The notes beneath the pieces are model-generated. The model was not told where the DNA came from, made no database searches, and worked only from the letters and a program-made list of their open reading frames with translations. The translations under genes were made by a program, and so were the position numbers. DNA of 64,000 nt from Raja brachyura (lineage: Eukaryota). Every line of letters starts with the position of its first letter. Position 1 is the first letter of the stretch. Of the stretch, positions 502 through 60,282 are shown piece by piece. The DNA lies in the NCBI GenBank assembly GCA_963514005.1, contig OY740795.1, positions 50,654,001-50,718,000 of the forward strand, given 5' to 3'.

Positions 502-1195
502 CTAGTGGGACCCGTGGGGGTTCCATGTTCACACGGGAGGGCTAGTCCCCCAATGCAATATTCCACCTCTCCACCAATTCCAATATTGGTCGCCAGTGGC
601 GGGGGGGGGGGGGGGGGGGGGGATTTCTGGAGCACAAGTGTGGGTGTTATGGGCCAAAGGGACTGTTTTCCGGAGGAAAATGGACATTGTGGGCCAAATG
701 GATTCTCGGGCTGGCAGCTCAGTCACTCAGGCCTGGTGGACTGGCAGCACAGTCACTCAGGACTGGTGGGCTGACAGCTCAGTCACTCAGGGCTGGCGGG
801 CTGGCAGTTCACTCAAGGCTATTCGTTGAAATTCCATTTTAAGCAGAGTGCAGGCCACCAAATTCAATTTCATAGCATTTCAAGCAGAGTGCAGGCCACC
901 GCATTCAGTTTCATGGCATTTCAAGTAGAGTGCAGGCCACCGCATTCAGTTTCATAGCATTTCAAGCAGAGTGCAGGCCACTGCATTCAGTTTCATAGCA
1001 TGTCAAGCAGAATGCAGGCCACCACATTCAGTTTCATAGCATTTCAAGCAGAGTGCAGGCCACTGCATTCAGTTTCATAGCATTTCAAGCAGAGTGCAGG
1101 CCACCGCATTCAGTTTCATTGCATTCCAAGCAGAGTGCAGACCACCGCATTCAGTTTCATAGTATTTCAAGCTTTGCCAAAACACACTTTTACAC
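502..1195 (-). mobile_element. Non-autonomous Helitron, 3' portion (same family as 32211-33699)
   Basis: Reverse complement matches the 3' part of 32211-33699 (CAATATTCCACCTCTCCACCAATTCCAATATTGG shared); CTAG terminus at 502-505 next to the GGGAC hairpin remnant. Confidence 0.75.
835..1172. repeat. 41-bp minisatellite (~8 units) inside Helitron
   Basis: Unit CATTTCAAGCAGAGTGCAGGCCACCGCATTCAGTTTCATAG, period 41 (starts at 876, 917...). A ~30-bp repeat (GGCTGGCAGCTCAGTCACTCAG...) precedes it at ~707-815. Confidence 0.9.
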
Positions 1196-4634: not shown

Positions 4635-5265
4635 TGCCCTCCCTGGGCACTTTCCCTTGCAACCGCAAGAGATGCTACACTTGTCGCTTCACCTCCCCCC
4701 TTGACTCCATTCAAGGACCCGAGCAGTCGTTCCAGGTGCGGCAGAGGTTCACCTGCAACTCCTCCAACCTCATCTATTGCATCCGCTGCTCTAGATGTCA
4801 GCTGATATACATCGGTGAGACCTAGCGTGGGCTTGCCGATCGTTTCGCCGAACACCTCCGCTCGGTCCGCATTAGCCAACCTGATCTCCCGGTGGCTCAG
4901 CACTTAAACTCCCCCTCCCATTCGGAATCCGAACTTTCTGTCCTGGGCCTCCTCCATGACCAGAGTGAGCACCACCGGAAATTGGCGGAACAGCACCTCA
5001 TATTCCGCTTGGGCAGTCTGCACCCTAGCGGCATAAACATTGACTTCTCCAATTTCCAGTAGCCCTTGCTGTCTCCTCCCCTTCCCAGCTCTCCCTCAGT
5101 CGGGCTCCTCCTCTTACTTTCTCCTTTCTTCTCCCCCCCCCCCCCCCCCCCCCGCCCCCACCCTACATCAGTCTGAAGAATGGTTTTGGCCCGAAACGTT
5201 GCCTATTTCCTTAGCTCCATAGATGCTGCTGCACCCGCTGAGTTTCTCCAGCACTTTTGTCTACC
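4635..5265 (+). mobile_element. 5'-truncated Penelope-like element (GIY-YIG remnant plus pLTR)
   Basis: Encodes GTFPCNRKRCYTC...NLIYCIRCSRCQLIYIGET (stop follows); 12-bp TSD TGCAGGCAGAAG at 4623-4634 and 5266-5277, inside a CR1 3' tail. Confidence 0.9.
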
Positions 5266-13784: not shown

Positions 13785-14005
13785 ATAGACACGTATATAT
13801 TGTGAATGCCGGGGTAACTCAGCAGGACAGGCAGCATCTCTGGAGAGAAGGAATGGGTGATGTTTCGGGTCGAGACTGGAGAAGGGTCTCGACCCGAAAC
13901 ATCACCCATTCCTTCCATACAGAGCTGCTGTCTGTCCTGCTGACTTACTCCAGCCTTTGTGTCTATCTTCAGTGTAAACCAGCATCTGCAGTTCCTTCCC
14001 ACACA
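13785..14005. mobile_element. Inverted (head-to-head) PLE pLTR dimer
   Basis: GTAACTCAGCAGGACAGGCAGCATCTCTGGAGAGAAGGAATGGGTGATGTTTCGGGTCGAGAC is followed by its near reverse complement plus the 3' tail; imperfect TSD GAAATATTG(T/G)G(A/T)AT. Confidence 0.8.
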
Positions 14006-18333: not shown

Positions 18334-18491
18334 TGTTTAAGAAGGAACTGCAGATGCTGGAAAATCGAAGGTAGACAAAAATACTGGAGAAACTCATTCT
18401 GAAGAAGGGTTTCGACCCGAAACGTTGCCTATTTCCTTCGCTCCATAGATGCTGCCTCACCAGCTGAGGTTCTCCTTCATTTTTGTCTACC
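18334..18491. mobile_element. Inverted PLE pLTR dimer with intact hammerhead core
   Basis: Antisense tail AAGAAGGAACTGCAGATGCTGG...GAGAAACTCA joined to sense CTGAAGAAGGGTTTCGACCCGAAACGTTGCC...TTTGTCTACC. Confidence 0.8.
18399..18426 (+). ncRNA. Minimal hammerhead ribozyme motif
   Basis: CUGAAGA-A-GGGU(UUCG)ACCC-GAAA-CG-UU: both conserved core boxes, stem II with a UUCG loop, palindromic ACGU helix III. Confidence 0.7.
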
Positions 18492-32014: not shown

Positions 32015-32136
32015 GGCAAAAATGCTGGAGTAACTCAGCGGGTGAGGCAGCATCTATGGAGCGAAGGAAATAGGCAACGTTTCGGGCTGAAACCCTTCTT
32101 CAGACTTTTCTTCAAAAACCATTTCTTCAGAAGAAG
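32015..32136 (-). mobile_element. Solo PLE pLTR with hammerhead core (32076-32103)
   Basis: Minus strand CTGAAGAAGGGTTTCAGCCCGAAACGTTGCC; 16-bp TSD AAATCTGGATTTGGTA (31999-32014, 32137-32152). Confidence 0.85.
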
Positions 32137-32617
32137 AAATCTGGATTTGGTAATGAACCGGATTTGATTAGAAAGCTTATGGTAAAGGGATCCCTTGAAG
32201 GTCGTTATCATCTATATTACTAAAAGTCTGATCTTGACCGGTTTTAGCTCACTGTGCTGTGATTTCTGAGAGAACGCTGCCACCTACGGCCGTCATCTTT
32301 GTCCAGCTCGCACAGGGCACCCCTCCCCCTTCCGGGACCAGAGGATTTTTCCCATAGATGAAAAATCATATATTTTTCATATGTTAATATATAAATGTTA
32401 ATATTAATGTTATTTAACAAATTCCCCACTCTCTCTGCTGCCCCTGCTGGAGGGAGGGGGAGGGACTATAAAACCAAGAAGTGGTGTGCCTCACTCAGTC
32501 TCTGCAAGATGAAGGAACAAGAGGGTCACGTCTCTCTGAGCTCTGAATAGTACTGGACACATGTCTACTCAACTGTGAGTGCCCTTAATGTGGTTTGAAA
32601 ATGAAAATATGGTTGGT

Positions 32618-32853
32618 TTGAAGTAAAAAGGCACTGCCTGCAAATGTTTGTTTGGGTGCTTTGGCTTGAAGTGAAAAAGCACTGCCTGCAAATGGTGGCT
32701 TGGGTGCTTTGGCTTGAAGTGAAAAGGCACTACTGAAAATGGTGGCTTGGGGGCTTTGGCTTGAAGTAAAAAGGCAATACTGCAAATGGTGGCTTGGGGG
32801 TTTAGGCTTGAAGTGAAAAGGCACGACTGCAAATGGTGGCTTGGATGCTTTGG
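32618..32853. repeat. 48-bp minisatellite A (~5 units) in Helitron
   Basis: GCACTGCCTGCAAATGGTGGCTTGGGTGCTTTGGCTTGAAGTGAAAAG at 32631, 32679, 32727... Confidence 0.9.
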
Positions 32854-33217
32854 CTAATTTCCTGTTTGCACTGCAAATTGATTTTAGATAAAACACTACC
32901 ACTTACGGCTGTGATTTTTGGCTATCTTACTCAGCCCCCCTCTGCTGAGCAGGTGCAGAGGATTCTTCCCATCAATTAAAAATAAAAGTGTCATTAGTGT
33001 TTAAAAAATGTTGAGAATCTCTGTCCTGTCATGAAGGCCACACCTTTTCCGGTGGGAGGGGGAGAGATTATGAAACCCGGAAGTGTGGGTGTGGCTCAGT
33101 CTCTGTATGATGGGGGAGGGAGAGGTCACGACTCTGTCTGAGCTGTGAATAAACTGAACACACTGAATGTCTACTGAACTGTGTGTTTGGTGTTTTGTGT
33201 GATTTTATGGTGGTTTC

Positions 33218-33482
33218 ACCCTGCTTGAAATGGTATGAAACTGCATTTGAATGAGGTGGCCTTGCACCCTGCATGAAGTGGTATGAAACTGCACTTGAAT
33301 TTAGTGGCCTTGCACCCTGCTTGAAGTGGTATGAAACTGCACTTGAATTTGATGGACTTGCACCCTGCTTGAAGTGGTATGAAACTGCACTTGAATTCGC
33401 TGGCCTTGGCTCCAGCTTGAAGTGTTATGAGACTGCACTTGAATTTGGTGGCCTTGCACCCTGCTTGAAATGGAATTTCAAG
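33218..33482. repeat. 48-bp minisatellite B (~5.5 units) in Helitron
   Basis: GGTATGAAACTGCACTTGAATTTGGTGGCCTTGCACCCTGCTTGAAGT at 33232, 33280, 33328... Confidence 0.9.
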
Positions 33483-42394: not shown

Positions 42395-43010
42395 AGAAGG
42401 AACTGCAGAAGCTGGTTTACACCGAATATAGACACAAAGTGCTGGAATAGCTCAGCGGGACGGACAGCATCTCTAGATAGAAGAAATGGGTGACGTTTTG
42501 TGTCAAGACCCTTCTTCAGACGGAGTCAGGGGAGAGGGAGACACAGAGATATGGAAGGGTAAGGTGTGAAAATGAGACATCAAAGGAGATGCATTCGGGG
42601 AAAATGTAGATTTGCAACATTGTTAGCAAGGAGATAGCGACAACGAAGGTTACAGAAATAAAATGTAATCGGGGGACAGTCAGACTGGTTGGAGGACTAG
42701 GAAGGGGGAGGGATGGAGCGGGAAGGAAAGCAAGTTAGAGAAGTCAATATTCAAACCGCTGGGGTGTAAGATGCCCAAGCGAAATATGAGGAGCTGTTCC
42801 TCCAATTTGCGCTGGGCCTCAATCTGACAGTGGAGGAGGCCCAGGACAGAGAGGTCAAGGAATGGGAGGGAGAGTTAGAGTGTTTGGCAACTGTGAAATC
42901 AGGTGGGTTTAGGCGGACTAAGCGGAGGTGTTCCGCAAAATGATCGGCCAGCCTGCTCTTGGTCTCGGCGATATATAGGAGTCCACACCTGGACCAGCGG
43001 ATACAGTCGG
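42395..43010 (-). mobile_element. PLE 3' end (GIY-YIG remnant plus pLTR)
   Basis: ORF 42751..43047 CIRWSRCGLLYIAETKSRLADHFAEHLR; pLTR at 42395-42520. Confidence 0.85.
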
Positions 43011-43292
43011 TGCACTTGCTGATTGGATCGATCAGAGCTCCATCCAAAAGAATGCAACATTAGGAGTGCTGGTGTGGATTGGATTGATCAGAGCTCTACA
43101 GTGCAGACCATTAGTACAGCTGTCCAAATTGTATAATTGTCAAAGTAACTTCTCAGTGCAGGAACTGCAAACAAAGTCTTCAGAGGGAGGGTGTTAAAGA
43201 AGGAACTGCAGATGCTGGAGAATCGAGGGTTACACAAAAGGCTGGAGAAACTCAGCGGGTGCAGCAGCATCTAAGGAGCGAAGGAGATAGGC

Positions 43293-43320
43293 GACGTTTC
43301 GGGTCGAGACCCTTCTTCAG
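43293..43320 (-). ncRNA. Minimal hammerhead ribozyme motif
   Basis: CUGAAGA-A-GGGU(CUCG)ACCC-GAAA-CG-UC with a GUC cleavage triplet. Confidence 0.7.
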
Positions 43321-43619
43321 ACCCTTATTTTTGGTATGGGTTGCTCCTCTGGTCGAGGAAGTACCGGAGGGCTTTGAGACCATCCTGGTGGGGGATGCAG
43401 GTGTATAGTGACTGGACGTCCATGGTGAAGATGAGAGGATGGGGGCCTGGACAACGGAATGTGTGGAGCCGACGGAGAGTGTCTGAGGTGTCTTGAACAT
43501 AGGTGGGGAGGGATTTAACAAAGGGGGATAGGATGGAGTCAAAGTATGTGGAAATGTGTTCGGTGGGGCACGAACAGGCAGAGACAATGGGTCTGCCGGG
43601 GCAGTCGGGTTTGTGGATT

Positions 43620-43723
43620 CACGAACAGGCAGAGACAATGGGTCTCACGAACAGGCAGAGACAATGGGTCTCACGAACAGGCAGAGACAATGGGTCTCAC
43701 GAACAGGCAGAGACAATGGGTCT
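43620..43723. repeat. 4 x 26-bp perfect tandem repeat copied from 43569-43594
   Basis: CACGAACAGGCAGAGACAATGGGTCT at 43620, 43646, 43672 and 43698; identical source copy inside the RT at 43569. Confidence 0.95.
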
Positions 43724-43788
43724 TCAGAGGGAGGGATGGAAACAGGGTTCACGGCTAGGTGGCTCATTTCCTTGTATTGCCTTATAAA

Positions 43789-43824
43789 CTGATGCCATTT
43801 TCACACTTTGCTTTCCAGGTGAGT
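43789..43824 (+). promoter_or_regulatory. Candidate recursive splice site (3' splice site directly followed by 5' splice site)
   Basis: CTGAT branch-like motif, pyrimidine tract TTTTCACACTTTGCTTTCCAG, then GTGAGT; about 58 nt free of AG upstream. Confidence 0.35.
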
Positions 43825-45170
43825 TCCGTGAAACTCCAGACATCCATGAACCCATCTGTAAGCTGCAAAAACCATGATCATGTCTTTGTGATTGACTGAT
43901 TATCCCTTTGAAATTGGTTATCGCACCTCTCCCAAAAGGATTAAATGAAGGCAATCTAATCCACTGCCGTTAAGTGTGGAACCCTGCACGCTGGGCTCAG
44001 ATCCCCGACATGTCTTCAACTACATGAGAGTCATCCCTTCCCAGACTCTCCCAAACCGATGCCCTCCGAAACATTGAAATTCAGCACGTTTCATTTCAAT
44101 CAATTTTGATAAATGCACTAGGGGGCTCTCCAGCAGTTCGTCAGTCACACAATCATCTCAAAGTCATAATCTCTTGACTTGCAGGACCTGGAGATAATTA
44201 TATTTGTGGCATGAAATATTATCATTTCCTCTGCTTAGCTAACAAAAAATGCTGCAAATGTGATCCATGGCATTTCATGTGCATCCTGTTTGTCAAATTG
44301 TCATTCATGATCAATAACTCCAATAAACGAGTTAAAAGTGTGAGCTGATGCTTTGCCAATAAACACATTAGCATTTTTCTACACTTTGCATTGGGTAAGT
44401 GAATCGCTCATTGAAATCACCAGTCTGCTATATTAGTGGCTTACTGCACTACAATCCCTGAGAAATGGCTCTTTAATCTCACATTTCATTCTCAACTTCT
44501 TGTAATGAATTCCATGCACCAGACATTGTGCAAAACCATTTGCATGGTTTTAGGTTTTCTACAATGCATGATGGTAATCATCTACAATCGCTGAATAAGT
44601 AACATTTCTTTCCTGATTCTAAATCAATAAAATGAGATTCATTCTTTACCATTTTAGAGTCTCAGTCTTACACTGGGAAAATGCAAGTTGACTTCTATTC
44701 TCAATAAGCTATGGAGGGCTTTGTCATATTCAAGCATTTCAATGACATAAAACCTGCTGCATATCACTGACGACCAGATACTTCAAAGATGCAAACTTCA
44801 AGCAAGCGCTTCCTGACGTGCTGTCAGAAGGATTTTATAATTTCAGCAAAGAGACAAAGTGCTAACATCATACCGCAGAAGATCTTCAGATGATAATTGA
44901 TTTCAAAAATGAACAACCGTTTGTCCTCAAATTCCTTCGAATTAAAATCCAATGTCTGAAAGTGATTCAGGGTGCAGTTAAGAAAGTTGGTAAGTCAGCC
45001 AAGGTGTTGCACATCCACTTCACAGACATAGTCTCTGATACATTGGCACTAAAATACCAGTCACTTGGATCAATGCCAACTGAGGCTTGCCAGAGATTAG
45101 CTTCCGAACAGCTACTGGGCAACTGAGGAATGGAACAAATATCTTGCTATCCTCATCACAGCCATCACAA

Positions 45171-45911
45171 ATGTCCCTGTTCTTCAGAGAACGGGGTTTC
45201 CCCTCCCCCACTATAGGTGAGGCTCGCACCAGGGTCTCCTCCATACCCCGCAACACTGCCCTCTCTCCCCATTCCCCCACTCATAACAAGGGCCGAGTCC
45301 CCCTGGTCCTCACCTTTCACCCCACCAGCCAGCGCATACAACAGATAGTCCTCCGCCAGTTTCGCCACCTCCAGCGTGACCCCTCCACTCGCCACATCTT
45401 CCCATCTCCCCCCCTGTCTGCCTTCCGCAAAGACCGCTCCCTCCGCAACTCCCTTGTCAATTCTTCCCTTCCCTCCCTCTCCACCCCTTCCCCGGGCACT
45501 TTCCCTTGCAACCGCAAGAGATGCTACACTTGTCCCTTCACCTCCCCCATCCACTCCTTTCAGGGACCCAAGCAGTCGTTCCAGGTCCGACAGAGGTTCA
45601 CCTGCACCTCCTCCAACCTCATCTACTGCATCCGTTGCTCCAGATGCCAGCTGATCTACGTTGGTGAGACCAAGCGGAGGCTGGGCGATCGTTTCGCCGA
45701 ACACCTCCGCTCGGTCCGCAATAACCAACCCGACCTCCCGGTGGCTCAGCACTTCAACTCCCCCTCCCATTCCGTATCCGACCTCTCGGTCCTGGGCCTC
45801 CTCCACGGCCAGAGTGAGCAACACCGTAAGTTGGAGGAACAGCACCTCATATTCCGCTTGGGGAGTCTGCATCCTCTGGGCTTAAACATTGAATTTTCTC
45901 AATTCTGTTAA
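45171..45911 (+). CDS. PLE C-terminal region: linker, Cys-rich motif and GIY-YIG endonuclease (246 aa from first ATG; 5'-truncated transposon ORF)
   Basis: Uninterrupted frame inside ORF 45087..45911; the track's N-terminal ~22 codons are host flank. Confidence 0.7.
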   Translation: MSLFFRERGFPSPTIGEARTRVSSIPRNTALSPHSPTHNKGRVPLVLTFHPTSQRIQQIVLRQFRHLQRDPSTRHIFPSPPLSAFRKDRSLRNSLVNSSLPSLSTPSPGTFPCNRKRCYTCPFTSPIHSFQGPKQSFQVRQRFTCTSSNLIYCIRCSRCQLIYVGETKRRLGDRFAEHLRSVRNNQPDLPVAQHFNSPSHSVSDLSVLGLLHGQSEQHRKLEEQHLIFRLGSLHPLGLNIEFSQFC

Positions 45912-58750: not shown

Positions 58751-58966
58751 GATAGACACAAAATGCTGGAGTAACTCAGGGGGACTGGCAGCATCTCTGG
58801 AGAGAAGGAATGGGTGACCATTTGGGTCAAGACCCTTTCAGAGTGAAGGTCTCGACCCGAAACGTCACGCATTCCTCTTCAGAGATGCAGGCTGCCCCGC
58901 TGACTTACTGCAGCAATGTGTGTCCATCTTTGGTGTAAAACAGAATCTGCAGTTCCTTCCTACACA
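58751..58966. mobile_element. Inverted PLE pLTR dimer
   Basis: GATAGACACAAAATGCTGGAGTAACTCAG...GACCC | AAGGTCTCGACCCGAAACGTCAC...CTGCAGTTCCTTCCTACAC; ACAGAGTA on both flanks. Confidence 0.8.
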
Positions 58967-59365
58967 GATAGACAGAGTATGCAGTTTGTGGGCAGCTGAT
59001 GGAATCATTCAGCACCTTGTGAATTCTGCTATTATGGAAAACCTGCAATGAGGGCTGGAACTCTAGCAATCCATCTACTTGGAGCTCTAGAATCATCATT
59101 GCAACATGCTGAGCAAAGGTTGGAAGTTTGGGTCAATTCATGGTTCAGTGCCTGCAAAACGGAAAGCAGAAAATGGCACATTTTAAGGTTCAGGCAATGA
59201 ATCAATGACCTTGATGTTTAACTCTGCTCAACTCTCTTCAGATACTGCCTGATCTGTTGAGTATCCCTAGCATTTTCTGCTGGTGACATAGCAATTCTGC
59301 TTATCATGCTCTTGGCTTAGAAGATAAATGGTACAACATTTAGTGCAAGATAAAGTCCAATGAAG

Positions 59366-59608
59366 ATAGACACTAAAAGCTGGAGTAACTCAATGGGTCA
59401 AATAGCATATCTGGAGAAAAGGATAAGGTGACGTTTCAGGTCGAGCGCTGTCTTCAGTCTGGAGTCTGAAGAATGTCTGAAGTCTGAAGCAGGGACTCGA
59501 CATGAAATGTCACCTATTCCTTTTCTCCAGAAATGCTGTCTGACCCGCTGAGTTACTCCGGCATTGTGTGCCTATCTTTGGTTTAAACCAGCATCTGCAG
59601 TTCCTCCC
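59366..59608. mobile_element. Inverted PLE pLTR dimer
   Basis: 15-bp TSD TAAAGTCCAATGAAG (59351-59365, 59609-59623); centre has a reiterated GTCTG(A/G)AG. Confidence 0.85.
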
Positions 59609-60282
59609 TAAAGTCCAATGAAGTCCAAGTAAAGATATTTCTTCCTAGTTCGAAGATGATTGAATCTTAATTTTTCATCACTTGATGTCCATGTTGTAGA
59701 GAAACTCCATTTTGCTAGTATGTTTTTTTCTCATATAACTAATGTTTTCATCTAACATTGATGAAATGACTCAACACTTGAAGAGGTTCTTACTAACCAC
59801 AAAGCATAAACATTGACATATTAAGGATAGCTCTGCCAAATTGTGTTGACATTTTTTGGGAGCATGGTAGACAGGGAAATATCTATGGTTGTATACTGGT
59901 TACAATTAGGCATTTCAGTGGTTCAGAAAATAGGATTATTATTATAAATAAGTGTGCATAGTATTGCAGGTAATTGGTGACATCGGTCAATAGTTGGTTT
60001 GTTAGTAAGAGAGGGAGAGATTATAAATAAAAGGATTGTTCTCTGATTACTAGGAGGTTATACGCGGTGATCCACAGATGTCAGCGCTGAATCCCCATCT
60101 TATTAACTTTGATAAAGAAATGGAAAAGTTTATATCCAGTCTGCAGATGACTCCAAATTGGGAGGTACAATTGCTTTGTTGAATAAGGGAAAGTGAGTTA
60201 ATCTTTTCTCTAAATCAGGTAAGGCCTGAATTTAATACCACTCCCCTTCCCTCAAAACAGGCACACTCAATCAACTGCACTC

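What the first reader, a model, noticed from the sequence alone, without database searches (positions are those of the whole stretch)
43192..43735. Penelope insertion ending in four perfect 26-nt reiterations of its own RT template (telomerase-like synthesis?)
Seen: between a 16-bp TSD, the + strand (the cDNA direction) reads pLTR, then jumps directly into ~300 nt of PLE RT coding sequence. It then returns 51 nt and repeats CACGAACAGGCAGAGACAATGGGTCT four times exactly, and joins the target through GTCT microhomology. The source copy (43569) is separated from the array by 25 nt, so simple adjacent slippage cannot explain the first repeat. Established: PLE RTs are the closest retroelement relatives of telomerase RT. 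Inference: this is a fossil of iterative template realignment by the PLE RT during integration, producing a new minisatellite.
Basis: partly seen in the sequence, partly recalled or inferred. Interest (0 to 1): 0.78.

Follow-up and report, generated by a model that had tools for sequence, protein, structure and literature searches.

The report
Penelope retrocopy with reiterated 26-nt end
A young, dead-on-arrival copy of a Penelope-like retrotransposon in a cartilaginous-fish genome ends in four exact 26-base re-copies of a piece of its own gene, probably a scar of the copying enzyme hopping back on its RNA template, which is an interesting anecdote about how these elements integrate but not proof of telomerase-like synthesis.

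Summary
A 528-bp insert (43192-43719) lies between perfect 16-bp target-site duplications. On the minus strand it reads: four exact 26-nt units, a 25-nt spacer, the source unit within 97 codons of Penelope-type RT, then the family's ~130-nt 3' terminal unit.

Contigs from other public runs show the empty site in two organisms. One shows the filled site, with array depth fitting about four units. So the insert is young and is not an assembly slip.

The family's RT region is covered about 10,000-fold deeper than the array. The array is therefore not a family feature.

The four re-entry junctions have 0 nt of homology. Only the final join to the target has 4 nt (GTCT). This fits serial, homology-independent template jumps or re-initiations at integration. 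It does not fit telomerase-style realignment by base pairing, nor simple slippage.

Two other TSD-bounded copies in this window also carry reiterated 5' ends.

Unresolved: one run with an empty-site contig also holds unit-unit sequence. That means either heterozygosity or an array elsewhere. Later slippage from two to four units is not excluded.

Earlier notes of this scan describe multi-jump Penelope insertions elsewhere in this genome, but not this array.

The parts
43176..43191 (.). left copy of the 16-bp target-site duplication
   Evidence: Exact match to 43720-43735 and the only two occurrences in the window. Present once in the empty-site contigs of runs X21 and X1.
43192..43322 (-). 3'-terminal unit of the Penelope-like element: hammerhead-like core, start of the ORF, and the long 'tail' form of the 3' end
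   Evidence: 22 other copies in the window at 72-97% identity. It ends at the same position as copy 18334-18396. Summed contig depth is in the millions. The Rfam hammerhead models give no hit.
43323..43619 (-). internal fragment of the PLE reverse-transcriptase gene (97 open codons 43328-43618, then a stop), joined directly to the 3' unit. About 2 kb of the element is missing between them. Up to about 8 nt at the 43323-43330 junction are of uncertain origin.
   Evidence: Translation. phmmer: 5387 hits, the best full-length ones carrying RVT_1 plus a C-terminal GIY-YIG domain. tblastn of P0010 hits 43331-43618. Contigs of other copies match up to 43619 and then diverge (records 14 and 21).
43569..43594 (-). 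source copy of the 26-nt unit in its native coding context (encodes RPIVSACS)
   Evidence: Exact unit. Relatives P0002, P0007, P0010 and P0027 have the same LPKIHK...GRPIVS context.
43595..43619 (-). 25-nt native spacer (encodes IHKPDCPG). Its end at 43619 is where first-pass cDNA synthesis stopped.
   Evidence: The family contigs leave the window sequence at 43619/43620.
43620..43723 (-). four exact tandem re-copies of the 26-nt unit. The last 4 nt (GTCT) overlap the right TSD.
   Evidence: Run X16 contig 15 reaches 30 nt into the array across a unit-unit junction. Array-bin depth is 22.9 against a flank depth of 6.9-7.7.
43720..43735 (.). right copy of the 16-bp target-site duplication

Best explanation
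This is a single, recent, dead-on-arrival retrocopy of a canonical endonuclease-bearing Penelope-like element. It was made by target-primed reverse transcription with several template jumps.

Proposed sequence of events:
1. The + strand 3'-OH at 43191 primed cDNA at the family's usual 'long-tail' start site.
2. The RT copied the ~130-nt terminal unit up to its usual 5' boundary (43322).
3. It jumped into the RT-coding part of a PLE RNA and copied ~297 nt, as far as 43619.
4. It then re-entered the RNA 51 nt back, at the same nucleotide four times, copying the same 26 nt each time.
5. Each round ended in GTCT, which is complementary to the 3' end of the other target overhang. After the fourth round that 4-nt pairing captured the cDNA, and the 16-nt gap was filled to give the TSD.

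What is shown: the anatomy, the youth of the insertion, the empty site, the lack of homology at the re-entry points, and the 4-nt homology at the final join.

What is inferred: that the PLE RT rather than a host polymerase made the re-copies; that all four were made at integration; and that the re-entry point is chosen by RNA structure (it lies in the C/A-rich loop of a predicted 6-bp hairpin).
For: - Anatomy and exactness.
- PLE identity of the coding piece.
- Canonical 3' end and TSD length: TSDs of 15-16 bp in 4 well-bounded copies in this window, namely ours, 32019, 59482 and 62112. The 3' end matches that of copy 18334-18396.
- Empty site: X21 record 24 joins 43175|43720. X1 record 1 does the same with 4 letters in place of 5.
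- Filled site in another sample: X16 records 8 and 15. Array bin depth is 22.9 against a flank of 6.9-7.7. For n units and 31-mers the expected ratio is n-1.15, giving n of about 4.1-4.5 (my arithmetic).
- The array is not a family feature: depth is 70,000-480,000 over 43320-43607 and falls to single or double digits from 43640.
- Zero homology at 4 of 4 re-entry junctions, against 4 nt at the target join.
- The same insertion already contains another jump, from the terminal unit into the RT fragment.
- Contigs of other copies join the same terminal-unit boundary to other RT positions: 43318>43490, 43322>43539, 43326>43523 and 43259>43417. They also show go-back joints: 43322>43290 in 7-9 contigs per run, and 43451>43418 in one contig.
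- 2 more of the 7 candidate TSD-bounded copies in this window carry reiterated 5'-terminal sequence. Copy 32019 has a 16-nt imperfect re-copy (2 of 2000 shuffles score as well). Copy 59482 has three TCTGAAG plus one TCTGGAG at the hinge.
- Literature: a purified lizard PLE protein starts reverse transcription at internal RNA sites in an AC-rich stem loop, with no homology to the DNA primer (PMC11167929, Main text read).
- The re-entry point GUG|CCCC lies in the loop of a predicted hairpin.
Against: - This is one locus only, so no enzyme can be assigned from sequence.
- All read evidence comes from 31-mer contigs that cannot span the 104-nt array. Copy number in other samples is a depth estimate only. 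For X19 it is compatible with anything from 3 to 6 units.
- Run X21, which has an unbranched empty-site contig, also has a contig of depth 11.4 (2.3x its flank depth). By bin arithmetic this contig lies at about 43675-43721, across a unit-unit junction, and it carries one extra G (tables 2 and 4). Either that sample is heterozygous or an array exists elsewhere.
- The hairpins are weak statistically: z = -1.71, and 11 of 200 shuffles fold as well.
- The other two reiterated 5' ends in the window are short and imperfect, unlike this one. The copy-59482 hinge match is not significant as a single alignment (79 of 2000 shuffles).
Confidence: 0.55

Rival explanations
1. Mixed origin. One or two jump-backs at integration produced unit-spacer-unit, or two tandem units. 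Replication slippage or unequal exchange after insertion then expanded the array to four.
For: Tandem 26-nt repeats can expand by slippage once two adjacent copies exist. All five copies are identical, as expected for recent homogenising expansion. Copy number in other carriers is known only roughly. The X21 contig with an extra G suggests the array can vary.
Against: The insertion is young: the empty site still exists in closely related samples whose flanks differ by 8 of 407 positions. Two successive expansions of a 2-copy array in that time is less parsimonious than one complex event. The depth in X16 fits 4 units, the same number as in the window. Slippage cannot make the first non-adjacent copy or the first adjacent pair.
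Confidence: 0.2
2. The chimera with its array already existed in a transcribed source copy. This locus is an ordinary retrocopy of that source.
For: Run X21 has an empty-site contig, yet also has a contig at 2.3x flank depth lying across a unit-unit junction. Rearranged non-autonomous PLE derivatives do amplify in this genome: go-back joints 43322>43290 and 43322>43191 are seen in 7-31 contigs per run.
Against: In X16 the array-bin depth is about 3x the flank, which is what one 4-unit locus gives. A second array-bearing locus would roughly double it. The family's RT region is about 1e4-1e5 times deeper than the array. No second copy of the RT fragment or the unit exists in the 64-kb window. 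This rival also only moves the origin of the array back one generation.
Confidence: 0.12
3. A host repair polymerase made the re-copies as templated insertions while the 5' end was being joined. The model would be theta-mediated end joining or another microhomology-driven synthesis, not the PLE RT.
For: The final join uses 4-nt microhomology. Microhomology at 5' junctions is reported for PLEs, R1/R2 and LINE-1 (PMC3846280 and PMC2718515, passages read). Iterated templated insertions near breaks are a recalled hallmark of that pathway; this is not tested here.
Against: Each priming step in that pathway needs a few paired bases. All 4 re-entry junctions have 0 nt. A 7-bp complementarity between the end of the spacer and the start of the unit could explain one unit-spacer-unit arrangement during second-strand synthesis, but it cannot explain the three unit-unit joins.
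Confidence: 0.08
4. Assembly artefact: the array length or the whole structure is an error of the window's assembly.
For: Perfect tandem repeats are error-prone in assemblies. No listed contig spans the whole stretch.
Against: Independent run X16 crosses both insertion junctions. It reaches a unit-unit junction and has array depth fitting about 4 units. The TSD and the empty site fit a real insertion exactly.
Confidence: 0.03

Closest known systems
Complex Penelope-like element insertions (5' truncation, partial tandems, inverted 5' copies, 'tail', microhomology joins, proposed template jumps)
   Same: Same element class and the same general messiness. Shared features are 5' truncation, a tail at the 3' end, a TSD, a microhomology-mediated 5' join and chimeric pieces (PMC8557442 and PMC3846280, passages read).
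   Different: In the passages I read, those descriptions concern whole-copy partial tandems, inverted copies and foreign inserts. They do not describe a short internal coding segment re-copied exactly four times inside one TSD.
Internal, homology-independent initiation of reverse transcription by a PLE protein (Anolis Poseidon; Frangieh et al. 2024, PMC11167929)
   Same: A DNA 3' end is extended on an internal RNA site that it does not pair with, and that site lies in an AC-rich stem loop. Here the cDNA end re-enters at a fixed internal site with 0-nt homology, in a C/A-rich predicted hairpin loop.
   Different: The paper describes initiation at the element's 3' region from a nicked target. 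It does not describe repeated re-initiation by a growing cDNA inside the ORF. The species and family also differ.
Telomerase repeat addition
   Same: The RT is from the sister clade of TERT (PMC8557442, Introduction passage). A short RNA segment with fixed start and end is copied repeatedly onto one DNA end.
   Different: There is no alignment region. The product end (..GTCT) cannot pair next to the restart point (0 nt at 4 of 4 junctions). The template is part of a coding RNA, not a dedicated RNA. Only four rounds are seen, in a single event.
Bacterial DRT2 concatemeric cDNA (PMC12039810, passages read)
   Same: An RT copies a bounded internal stretch of a linear RNA again and again into tandem repeats.
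   Different: DRT2 is a dedicated defence system. It has a structured ncRNA, a 120-nt template with conserved motifs at both ends, and a template hairpin. It is of the group-II-intron RT family. The case here looks like an accident of integration.
R1/R2 and LINE-1 5' junction variation (PMC2718515, passages read)
   Same: Microhomology of 1-5 nt between the cDNA end and the upstream target. RT run-off and template jumps are invoked.
   Different: Those junctions carry non-templated bases or duplicated target sequence, not iterated copies of element-internal sequence.

Membership tests
Canonical (EN+) Penelope-like element insertion | PLE-type reverse transcriptase sequence | tested here: met
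   The 97-aa frame gives 5387 phmmer hits at E<=1e-3. Full-length relatives P0010 and P0027 align over residues ~401-503. In both, RVT_1 scores below Pfam's cut-off (25.2 and 24.9 against 29.6 bits). GIY-YIG passes the cut-off in P0010 only (28.4 against 22.6 bits; P0027 scores 20.5). Pfam finds nothing in the fragment itself.
Canonical (EN+) Penelope-like element insertion | C-terminal GIY-YIG endonuclease | tested here: not met
   It is absent from this copy, because the fragment stops after RT motif A. It is present in relatives and in other copies in the window, at 4646-5038 and 45165-45887. The absence is a deletion in a dead copy, not evidence against family membership.
Canonical (EN+) Penelope-like element insertion | pLTR-derived 3' end with a hammerhead motif and an optional 30-40-bp tail | tested here: inconclusive
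   A hammerhead-like core (CUGAAGA ... GAAAC) is visible, and both short and long 3' ends about 35 nt apart occur among the window's copies. This matches the published tail. No Rfam hammerhead model scores at gathering level or at E<=10.
Canonical (EN+) Penelope-like element insertion | Target-site duplication and an empty site | tested here: met
   A perfect 16-bp TSD. Empty-site contigs are seen in runs X21 and X1.
Telomerase-like repeat addition | Product 3' end realigns by base pairing with the template next to the restart point | tested here: not met
   The cDNA ends ..GGATT and ..GGTCT are compared with the native ..TGGGG that precedes the restart. The terminal match is 0 nt at 4 of 4 junctions.
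Telomerase-like repeat addition | Fixed template boundaries over successive rounds | tested here: met
   Four rounds have identical start and end points.
Telomerase-like repeat addition | Repeat-addition processivity of the enzyme | not testable with these tools
   This needs a recombinant PLE RT assay.
Slippage-born minisatellite | New copies arise adjacent to the parent copy, and copy number varies among alleles | tested here: inconclusive
   The first re-copy is not adjacent, being separated by the 25-nt spacer. Allelic copy number is estimated only from contig depth: about 4 in X16 and 3-6 in X19.
Microhomology-primed templated insertion (host end joining) | A few paired bases at every priming step | tested here: not met
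   0 nt at the 4 internal junctions. 4 nt only at the final join.

The most novel reading that the evidence does not exclude
Penelope-like RTs retain an intrinsic, telomerase-like ability to copy a short, bounded stretch of RNA repeatedly. The proposal is that the enzyme stays anchored to a stem loop next to the restart point and re-initiates there without primer pairing. Each round would end when the tether is exhausted, or when the new 3' end tests the other target end for microhomology. If so, PLE integration would be a direct source of new minisatellites. It would also be a living model for how a retroelement RT could have become a repeat-adding enzyme. The internal-segment tandem arrays of PLE RT sequence seen in predicted proteins of other genomes (P0001, P0114, P0051) could be larger products of the same behaviour.
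Probability: 0.2. Interest if true: 0.75.

Novelty: new variant of a known kind. Interest (0 to 1): 0.45.

Why it matters
How Penelope-like elements finish integration, and why they form tandem and inverted structures, is described as undefined in the literature I read (PMC8557442). The first in-vitro work (PMC11167929) showed primer-independent internal initiation.

A TSD-bounded natural insertion with a matching empty site freezes the order of events in one integration. It has four exact re-entries at one nucleotide without homology, followed by a microhomology join. That makes a concrete, testable template: about 80 nt of RNA plus a target overhang ending in AGAC. With it one can ask whether the PLE RT can re-initiate repeatedly.

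If general, this behaviour would be a source of de novo minisatellites in PLE-rich genomes. As a single locus, it remains an anecdote.

Tried and rejected
- **Rfam.** The whole window at gathering thresholds gave 0 hits. The region 43100-43800 at E<=10 gave only three chance-level snoRNA/lncRNA hits and no hammerhead. I therefore do not call the core a tested ribozyme.
- **Pfam.** The 97-aa fragment gave no family. Its identity rests on phmmer relatives instead.
- **Native DNA copy for comparison.** I looked for a second copy of the RT fragment in the window, to fix the exact junctions and the age. blastn found none. tblastn with P0010 found only this one N-terminal RT piece. The origin of about 8 nt at 43323-43330 and the post-insertion divergence are therefore undetermined.
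- **Homology-driven realignment.** A 6-nt direct repeat (TGCCCC in sense) flanks the region with a 33-nt period. It would predict a 33-nt unit, not the observed 26 nt, so I rejected it.
- **Snap-back priming.** A 7-bp complementarity links the end of the spacer and the start of the unit. Snap-back would give an inverted copy, which is not seen. It could explain a unit-spacer-unit arrangement during second-strand synthesis but not the unit-unit joins.
- **Rolling-circle copying.** A 26-nt RNA circle is implausibly small, so I rejected it.
- **RNA structure as the cause.** Two hairpins are predicted, but the fold is not significantly better than shuffles (z = -1.71). I keep this as an inference only.
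- **Earlier notes of this scan.** Nothing at this place. Nothing for the word combination. Related Penelope notes elsewhere in the genome appear.
- **Literature.** My searches and the passages read in PMC8557442, PMC3846280, PMC11167929 and PMC2718515 gave no description of an exact multi-copy reiteration of a short internal segment at a PLE 5' junction. This is not proof that none is in print. Supplements were not opened and may hold junction catalogues.
Full report
**What is there.**
The + strand between 43176 and 43735 reads as follows:
- a 16-bp direct repeat (43176-43191);
- 131 nt of a highly repeated unit (43192-43322);
- 297 nt of coding-like sequence (43323-43619);
- four exact tandem copies of a 26-nt unit (43620-43723);
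- the second copy of the 16-bp repeat (43720-43735), whose first four bases are also the last four of the array.

The unit occurs once more, at 43569-43594, 25 nt before the array. It occurs nowhere else in the window on either strand.

TRF reports one array of period 26 over 43569-43723 at 79% matches, because it counts the spacer as a poor copy. The repeat finder shows the tandem frames at 100% identity. The other long-period arrays in the window (periods 30-82 nt) have 77-91% matches.

**What the pieces are.**
On the minus strand, 43618-43328 is an open frame of 97 codons followed by a stop.
- phmmer against 1.84 billion representatives gave 5387 proteins at E<=1e-3 and 1174 at E<=1e-10.
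- The full-length relatives P0010 (919 aa) and P0027 (927 aa) align to it at residues ~401-503.
- P0010 carries a C-terminal GIY-YIG domain above Pfam's cut-off and RVT_1 just below it. P0027 has both just below cut-off.
- That is the architecture of canonical endonuclease-bearing Penelope-like elements, as described in PMC8557442 and PMC11167929.
- Pfam itself sees nothing in the 97-aa piece.
- Relatives P0002, P0007, P0010 and P0027 all read LPKIHK...GRPIVS at this place. The spacer plus source unit is therefore native gene sequence, and the four units upstream of it (in sense) are not.

The 131-nt piece has 22 other copies in the 64-kb window at 72-97% identity.
- In copies that keep more of the element, it follows the endonuclease coding region and a 3' UTR.
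- It therefore corresponds to the pLTR-derived 3' end that published work describes: a hammerhead motif, the start of the next ORF, and an optional 30-40-bp tail.
- Both short and long 3' ends occur among the window's copies. This insert ends at the long form, at the same position as copy 18334-18396.
- The hammerhead-like core is visible by eye, but no Rfam model scores. I leave the ribozyme untested.

**Direction of synthesis.**
The element's sense strand is the window's minus strand.

Read that way, one insertion contains:
- normal initiation at the long-tail site;
- a complete copy of the terminal unit up to the boundary at which several of the window's other copies also begin and behind which contigs of other copies diverge (loose-end agreement 0.34-0.36 behind 43322);
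- a jump into the RT gene;
- 297 nt of synthesis;
- four returns to one nucleotide.

**Is it real and how old is it?**
I laid the contigs of four public runs, one from each of four coded organisms, on 43000-43950 at 90% likeness. These were 4 of the 21 runs listed.
- **X21** has a 1664-nt contig that joins 43175 directly to 43720. It differs at 2 of 176 and 6 of 231 positions.
- **X1** has a 425-nt contig doing the same, with 4 letters in place of 43171-43175. It differs at 8 of 171 and 10 of 136 positions. Both are empty sites holding one copy of the 16-mer.
- **X16** has contigs that cross the left TSD into the insert (43000-43216, 2 differences). Another runs from the right flank 30 nt into the array, across a unit-unit junction (43694-43950, 2 differences).
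- **X16 copy number.** Its array bin has depth 22.9 against 6.9-7.7 in the flanks. For 31-mers, a perfect array of n units collapses to 26 words of mean multiplicity n-1.15. That gives n of about 4.1-4.5.
- **X19** has a right-flank contig that ends exactly at 43720. That is where filled and empty alleles would branch. It also has two left-flank haplotypes. This is compatible with heterozygosity, and its array depth fits anything from 3 to 6 units.

The insert is therefore a real, young, lineage-specific or still polymorphic insertion, and four units is supported independently, though only by depth.

The RT region is covered at 70,000-480,000 and the terminal unit at millions. From 43640 the depth is single or double digits. 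The array is not a property of the family.

**A result against a clean story.**
In X21, the run with the empty-site contig, a contig of depth 11.4 (2.3x its flank depth of 4.92) lies on the array and carries an extra G after 43700. From the bin depths I place it at about 43675-43721, across a unit-unit junction (tables 2 and 4; my arithmetic).

It keeps the 'source copy already had the array' rival alive.

**Mechanism.**
At the spacer-to-unit junction and at the three unit-to-unit junctions, the cDNA ends ..GGATT or ..GGTCT. The sequence that natively precedes the restart point ends ..TGGGG.
- The terminal overlap is 0 nt in 4 of 4 cases, on either side of the junction.
- This argues against telomerase-style realignment.
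- It also argues against ordinary slippage. A 6-nt direct repeat nearby would predict a 33-nt unit.
- It argues against microhomology-primed repair synthesis.
- It is what homology-independent template jumping or re-initiation looks like.

The one biochemical study of a PLE protein found that reverse transcription starts at internal RNA sites in an AC-rich stem loop with no homology to the DNA primer (PMC11167929, Main text read).

Here the restart point (GUG|CCCC in the RNA) lies in the C/A-rich 8-nt loop of a predicted 6-bp hairpin. The fold as a whole is not significant (z = -1.71; 11 of 200 shuffles fold as well), so this parallel is a lead, not a result.

Each round ends in GTCT, the only sequence in the region that pairs with the 3' end of the other target overhang. 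The final join uses exactly those 4 nt. I therefore propose trial-and-error capture: each time GTCT is made the end can pair with the target, and if the 4-bp pairing fails the RT re-initiates at its preferred loop.

**Is hopping usual for this family?**
Several observations say yes.
- Contigs of other copies join the same terminal-unit boundary to other RT positions: 43318>43490, 43322>43539, 43326>43523 and 43259>43417.
- They also show go-back joints: 43322>43290 in 7-9 contigs per run, 43322>43191 in 21-31 contigs per run, and 43451>43418 in one contig. A further 75 joints were not shown.
- Some of these may be amplified subfamilies rather than independent events.
- In the window I found 7 candidate TSD-bounded copies: 5171, 32019, 43193, 47844, 59482, 61329 (doubtful, 11-bp TSD) and 62112.
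- Two are plain 5' truncations (5171, 47844).
- One has about 50 nt of unexplained 5' sequence (62112).
- One has 142 nt of unexplained upstream sequence (61329).
- Besides the present one, two have reiterated 5'-terminal sequence. Copy 32019 has a 16-bp TSD and 31 extra nt containing an imperfect 16-nt re-copy of its own first 16 nt (2 of 2000 shuffles as good). Copy 59482 has a 15-bp TSD and an inverted copy plus a direct copy, with TCTGGAG/TCTGAAG repeated four times at the hinge (the single best match alone is not significant, 79 of 2000).
- An earlier follow-up in this scan (s1-880677) independently described a multi-jump Penelope insertion elsewhere in this genome. I did not check it.

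**Other genomes.**
Among the 150 best phmmer hits, 5 match the query in two or more stretches. Three are clear tandem arrays of an internal RT segment, with periods of 89, 160 and 258 aa in P0001, P0114 and P0051. P0124 is a partial duplication.

These units lack the element's 3' end, so they are not the classical partial tandems. They may equally be satellites amplified after insertion.

**Comparison with the known.**
The literature read here describes several related things:
- PLE insertions as 5'-truncated, partially tandem or inverted, with tails, microhomology joins and proposed template jumps (PMC8557442, PMC3846280; passages);
- R1/R2 5' junctions with 1-5-nt microhomology, non-templated bases and target duplications (PMC2718515; passages);
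- a bacterial RT that concatenates a bounded RNA template (PMC12039810; passages).

None of the passages I saw describes an exact multi-round re-copy of a short internal segment within one TSD. My five literature searches found none. Supplements were not opened.

I therefore rate it a new variant of a known kind: RT template-jump scars at retroelement 5' junctions. It is telomerase-like in outcome but not in the defining alignment step.

**Verdict.**
- Observation: confirmed.
- Interpretation: partly supported.
- Best explanation: serial homology-independent jumps at a single recent integration, ended by a 4-nt microhomology capture. Confidence 0.55.
- Interest: 0.45. It is a clean, datable natural example that suggests a specific experiment, but it is a single locus with an unresolved caveat.

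Noticed in passing
window 32019-32152 (minus strand): Another PLE terminal-unit insertion with a perfect 16-bp TSD. Between the TSD and the unit's normal 5' boundary lie 31 extra nt (32136-32106). They contain an imperfect 16-nt re-copy of the unit's own first 16 nt, followed by a shorter one.
   Followed up: partly
window 59353-59620: A TSD-bounded (15 bp) insertion made of an inverted and a direct copy of the terminal unit, head to head. The hinge (59458-59482) repeats TCTGGAG/TCTGAAG four times.
   Followed up: partly
window 43010-43040 and 43066-43096: A 31-nt direct repeat (81% identity, spacing 56, spacer 25 nt) at the 5' end of an older PLE fragment (about 42395-43047, minus strand, with endonuclease-like ORF 42751-43047). 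It has the same unit-spacer-unit geometry as the finding. Its origin is not worked out. Four of the five differences of run X19's second haplotype lie in or between the two repeat copies (43047, 43052, 43075, 43077); the fifth is at 43108.
   Followed up: partly
window 13805-13998, 18334-18483, 58756-58959: Three head-to-head inverted pairs of the terminal unit. At 13876 the hinge is palindromic. The literature describes the same for PLE inverted junctions.
   Followed up: no
whole window: About 23 copies of the ~90-130-nt PLE terminal unit in 64 kb. Several begin at or within 4 nt of one 5' boundary (GTCT|GAAGAAGG) with unrelated upstream sequence. They look like a short non-autonomous derivative, which is also the subject of earlier notes of this scan and of a 2026 preprint on animal retrozymes (abstract seen).
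   Followed up: partly
proteins P0001, P0114, P0051, P0124 (other genomes): Predicted proteins that are tandem arrays (periods 89, 160 and 258 aa) or partial duplications of an internal PLE RT segment lacking the element's 3' end. In P0001 the unit's 3' boundary falls within a few residues of where this insert's RT fragment begins.
   Followed up: partly
run X21 on window ~43675-43721: A contig at 2.3x flank depth lies across a unit-unit junction and carries one extra G after 43700. It comes from a sample whose long contig shows the empty site. Either the sample is heterozygous or a second array exists.
   Followed up: no
window 835-1172, 32613-32855, 33217-33473: Minisatellites with 41-48-nt units and 87-91% matches. 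They are unrelated to the finding.
   Followed up: no
window 43108: The window has C here. All four laid runs have T, except one X19 haplotype contig that is identical to the window. X19 may be the source sample or close to it.
   Followed up: no
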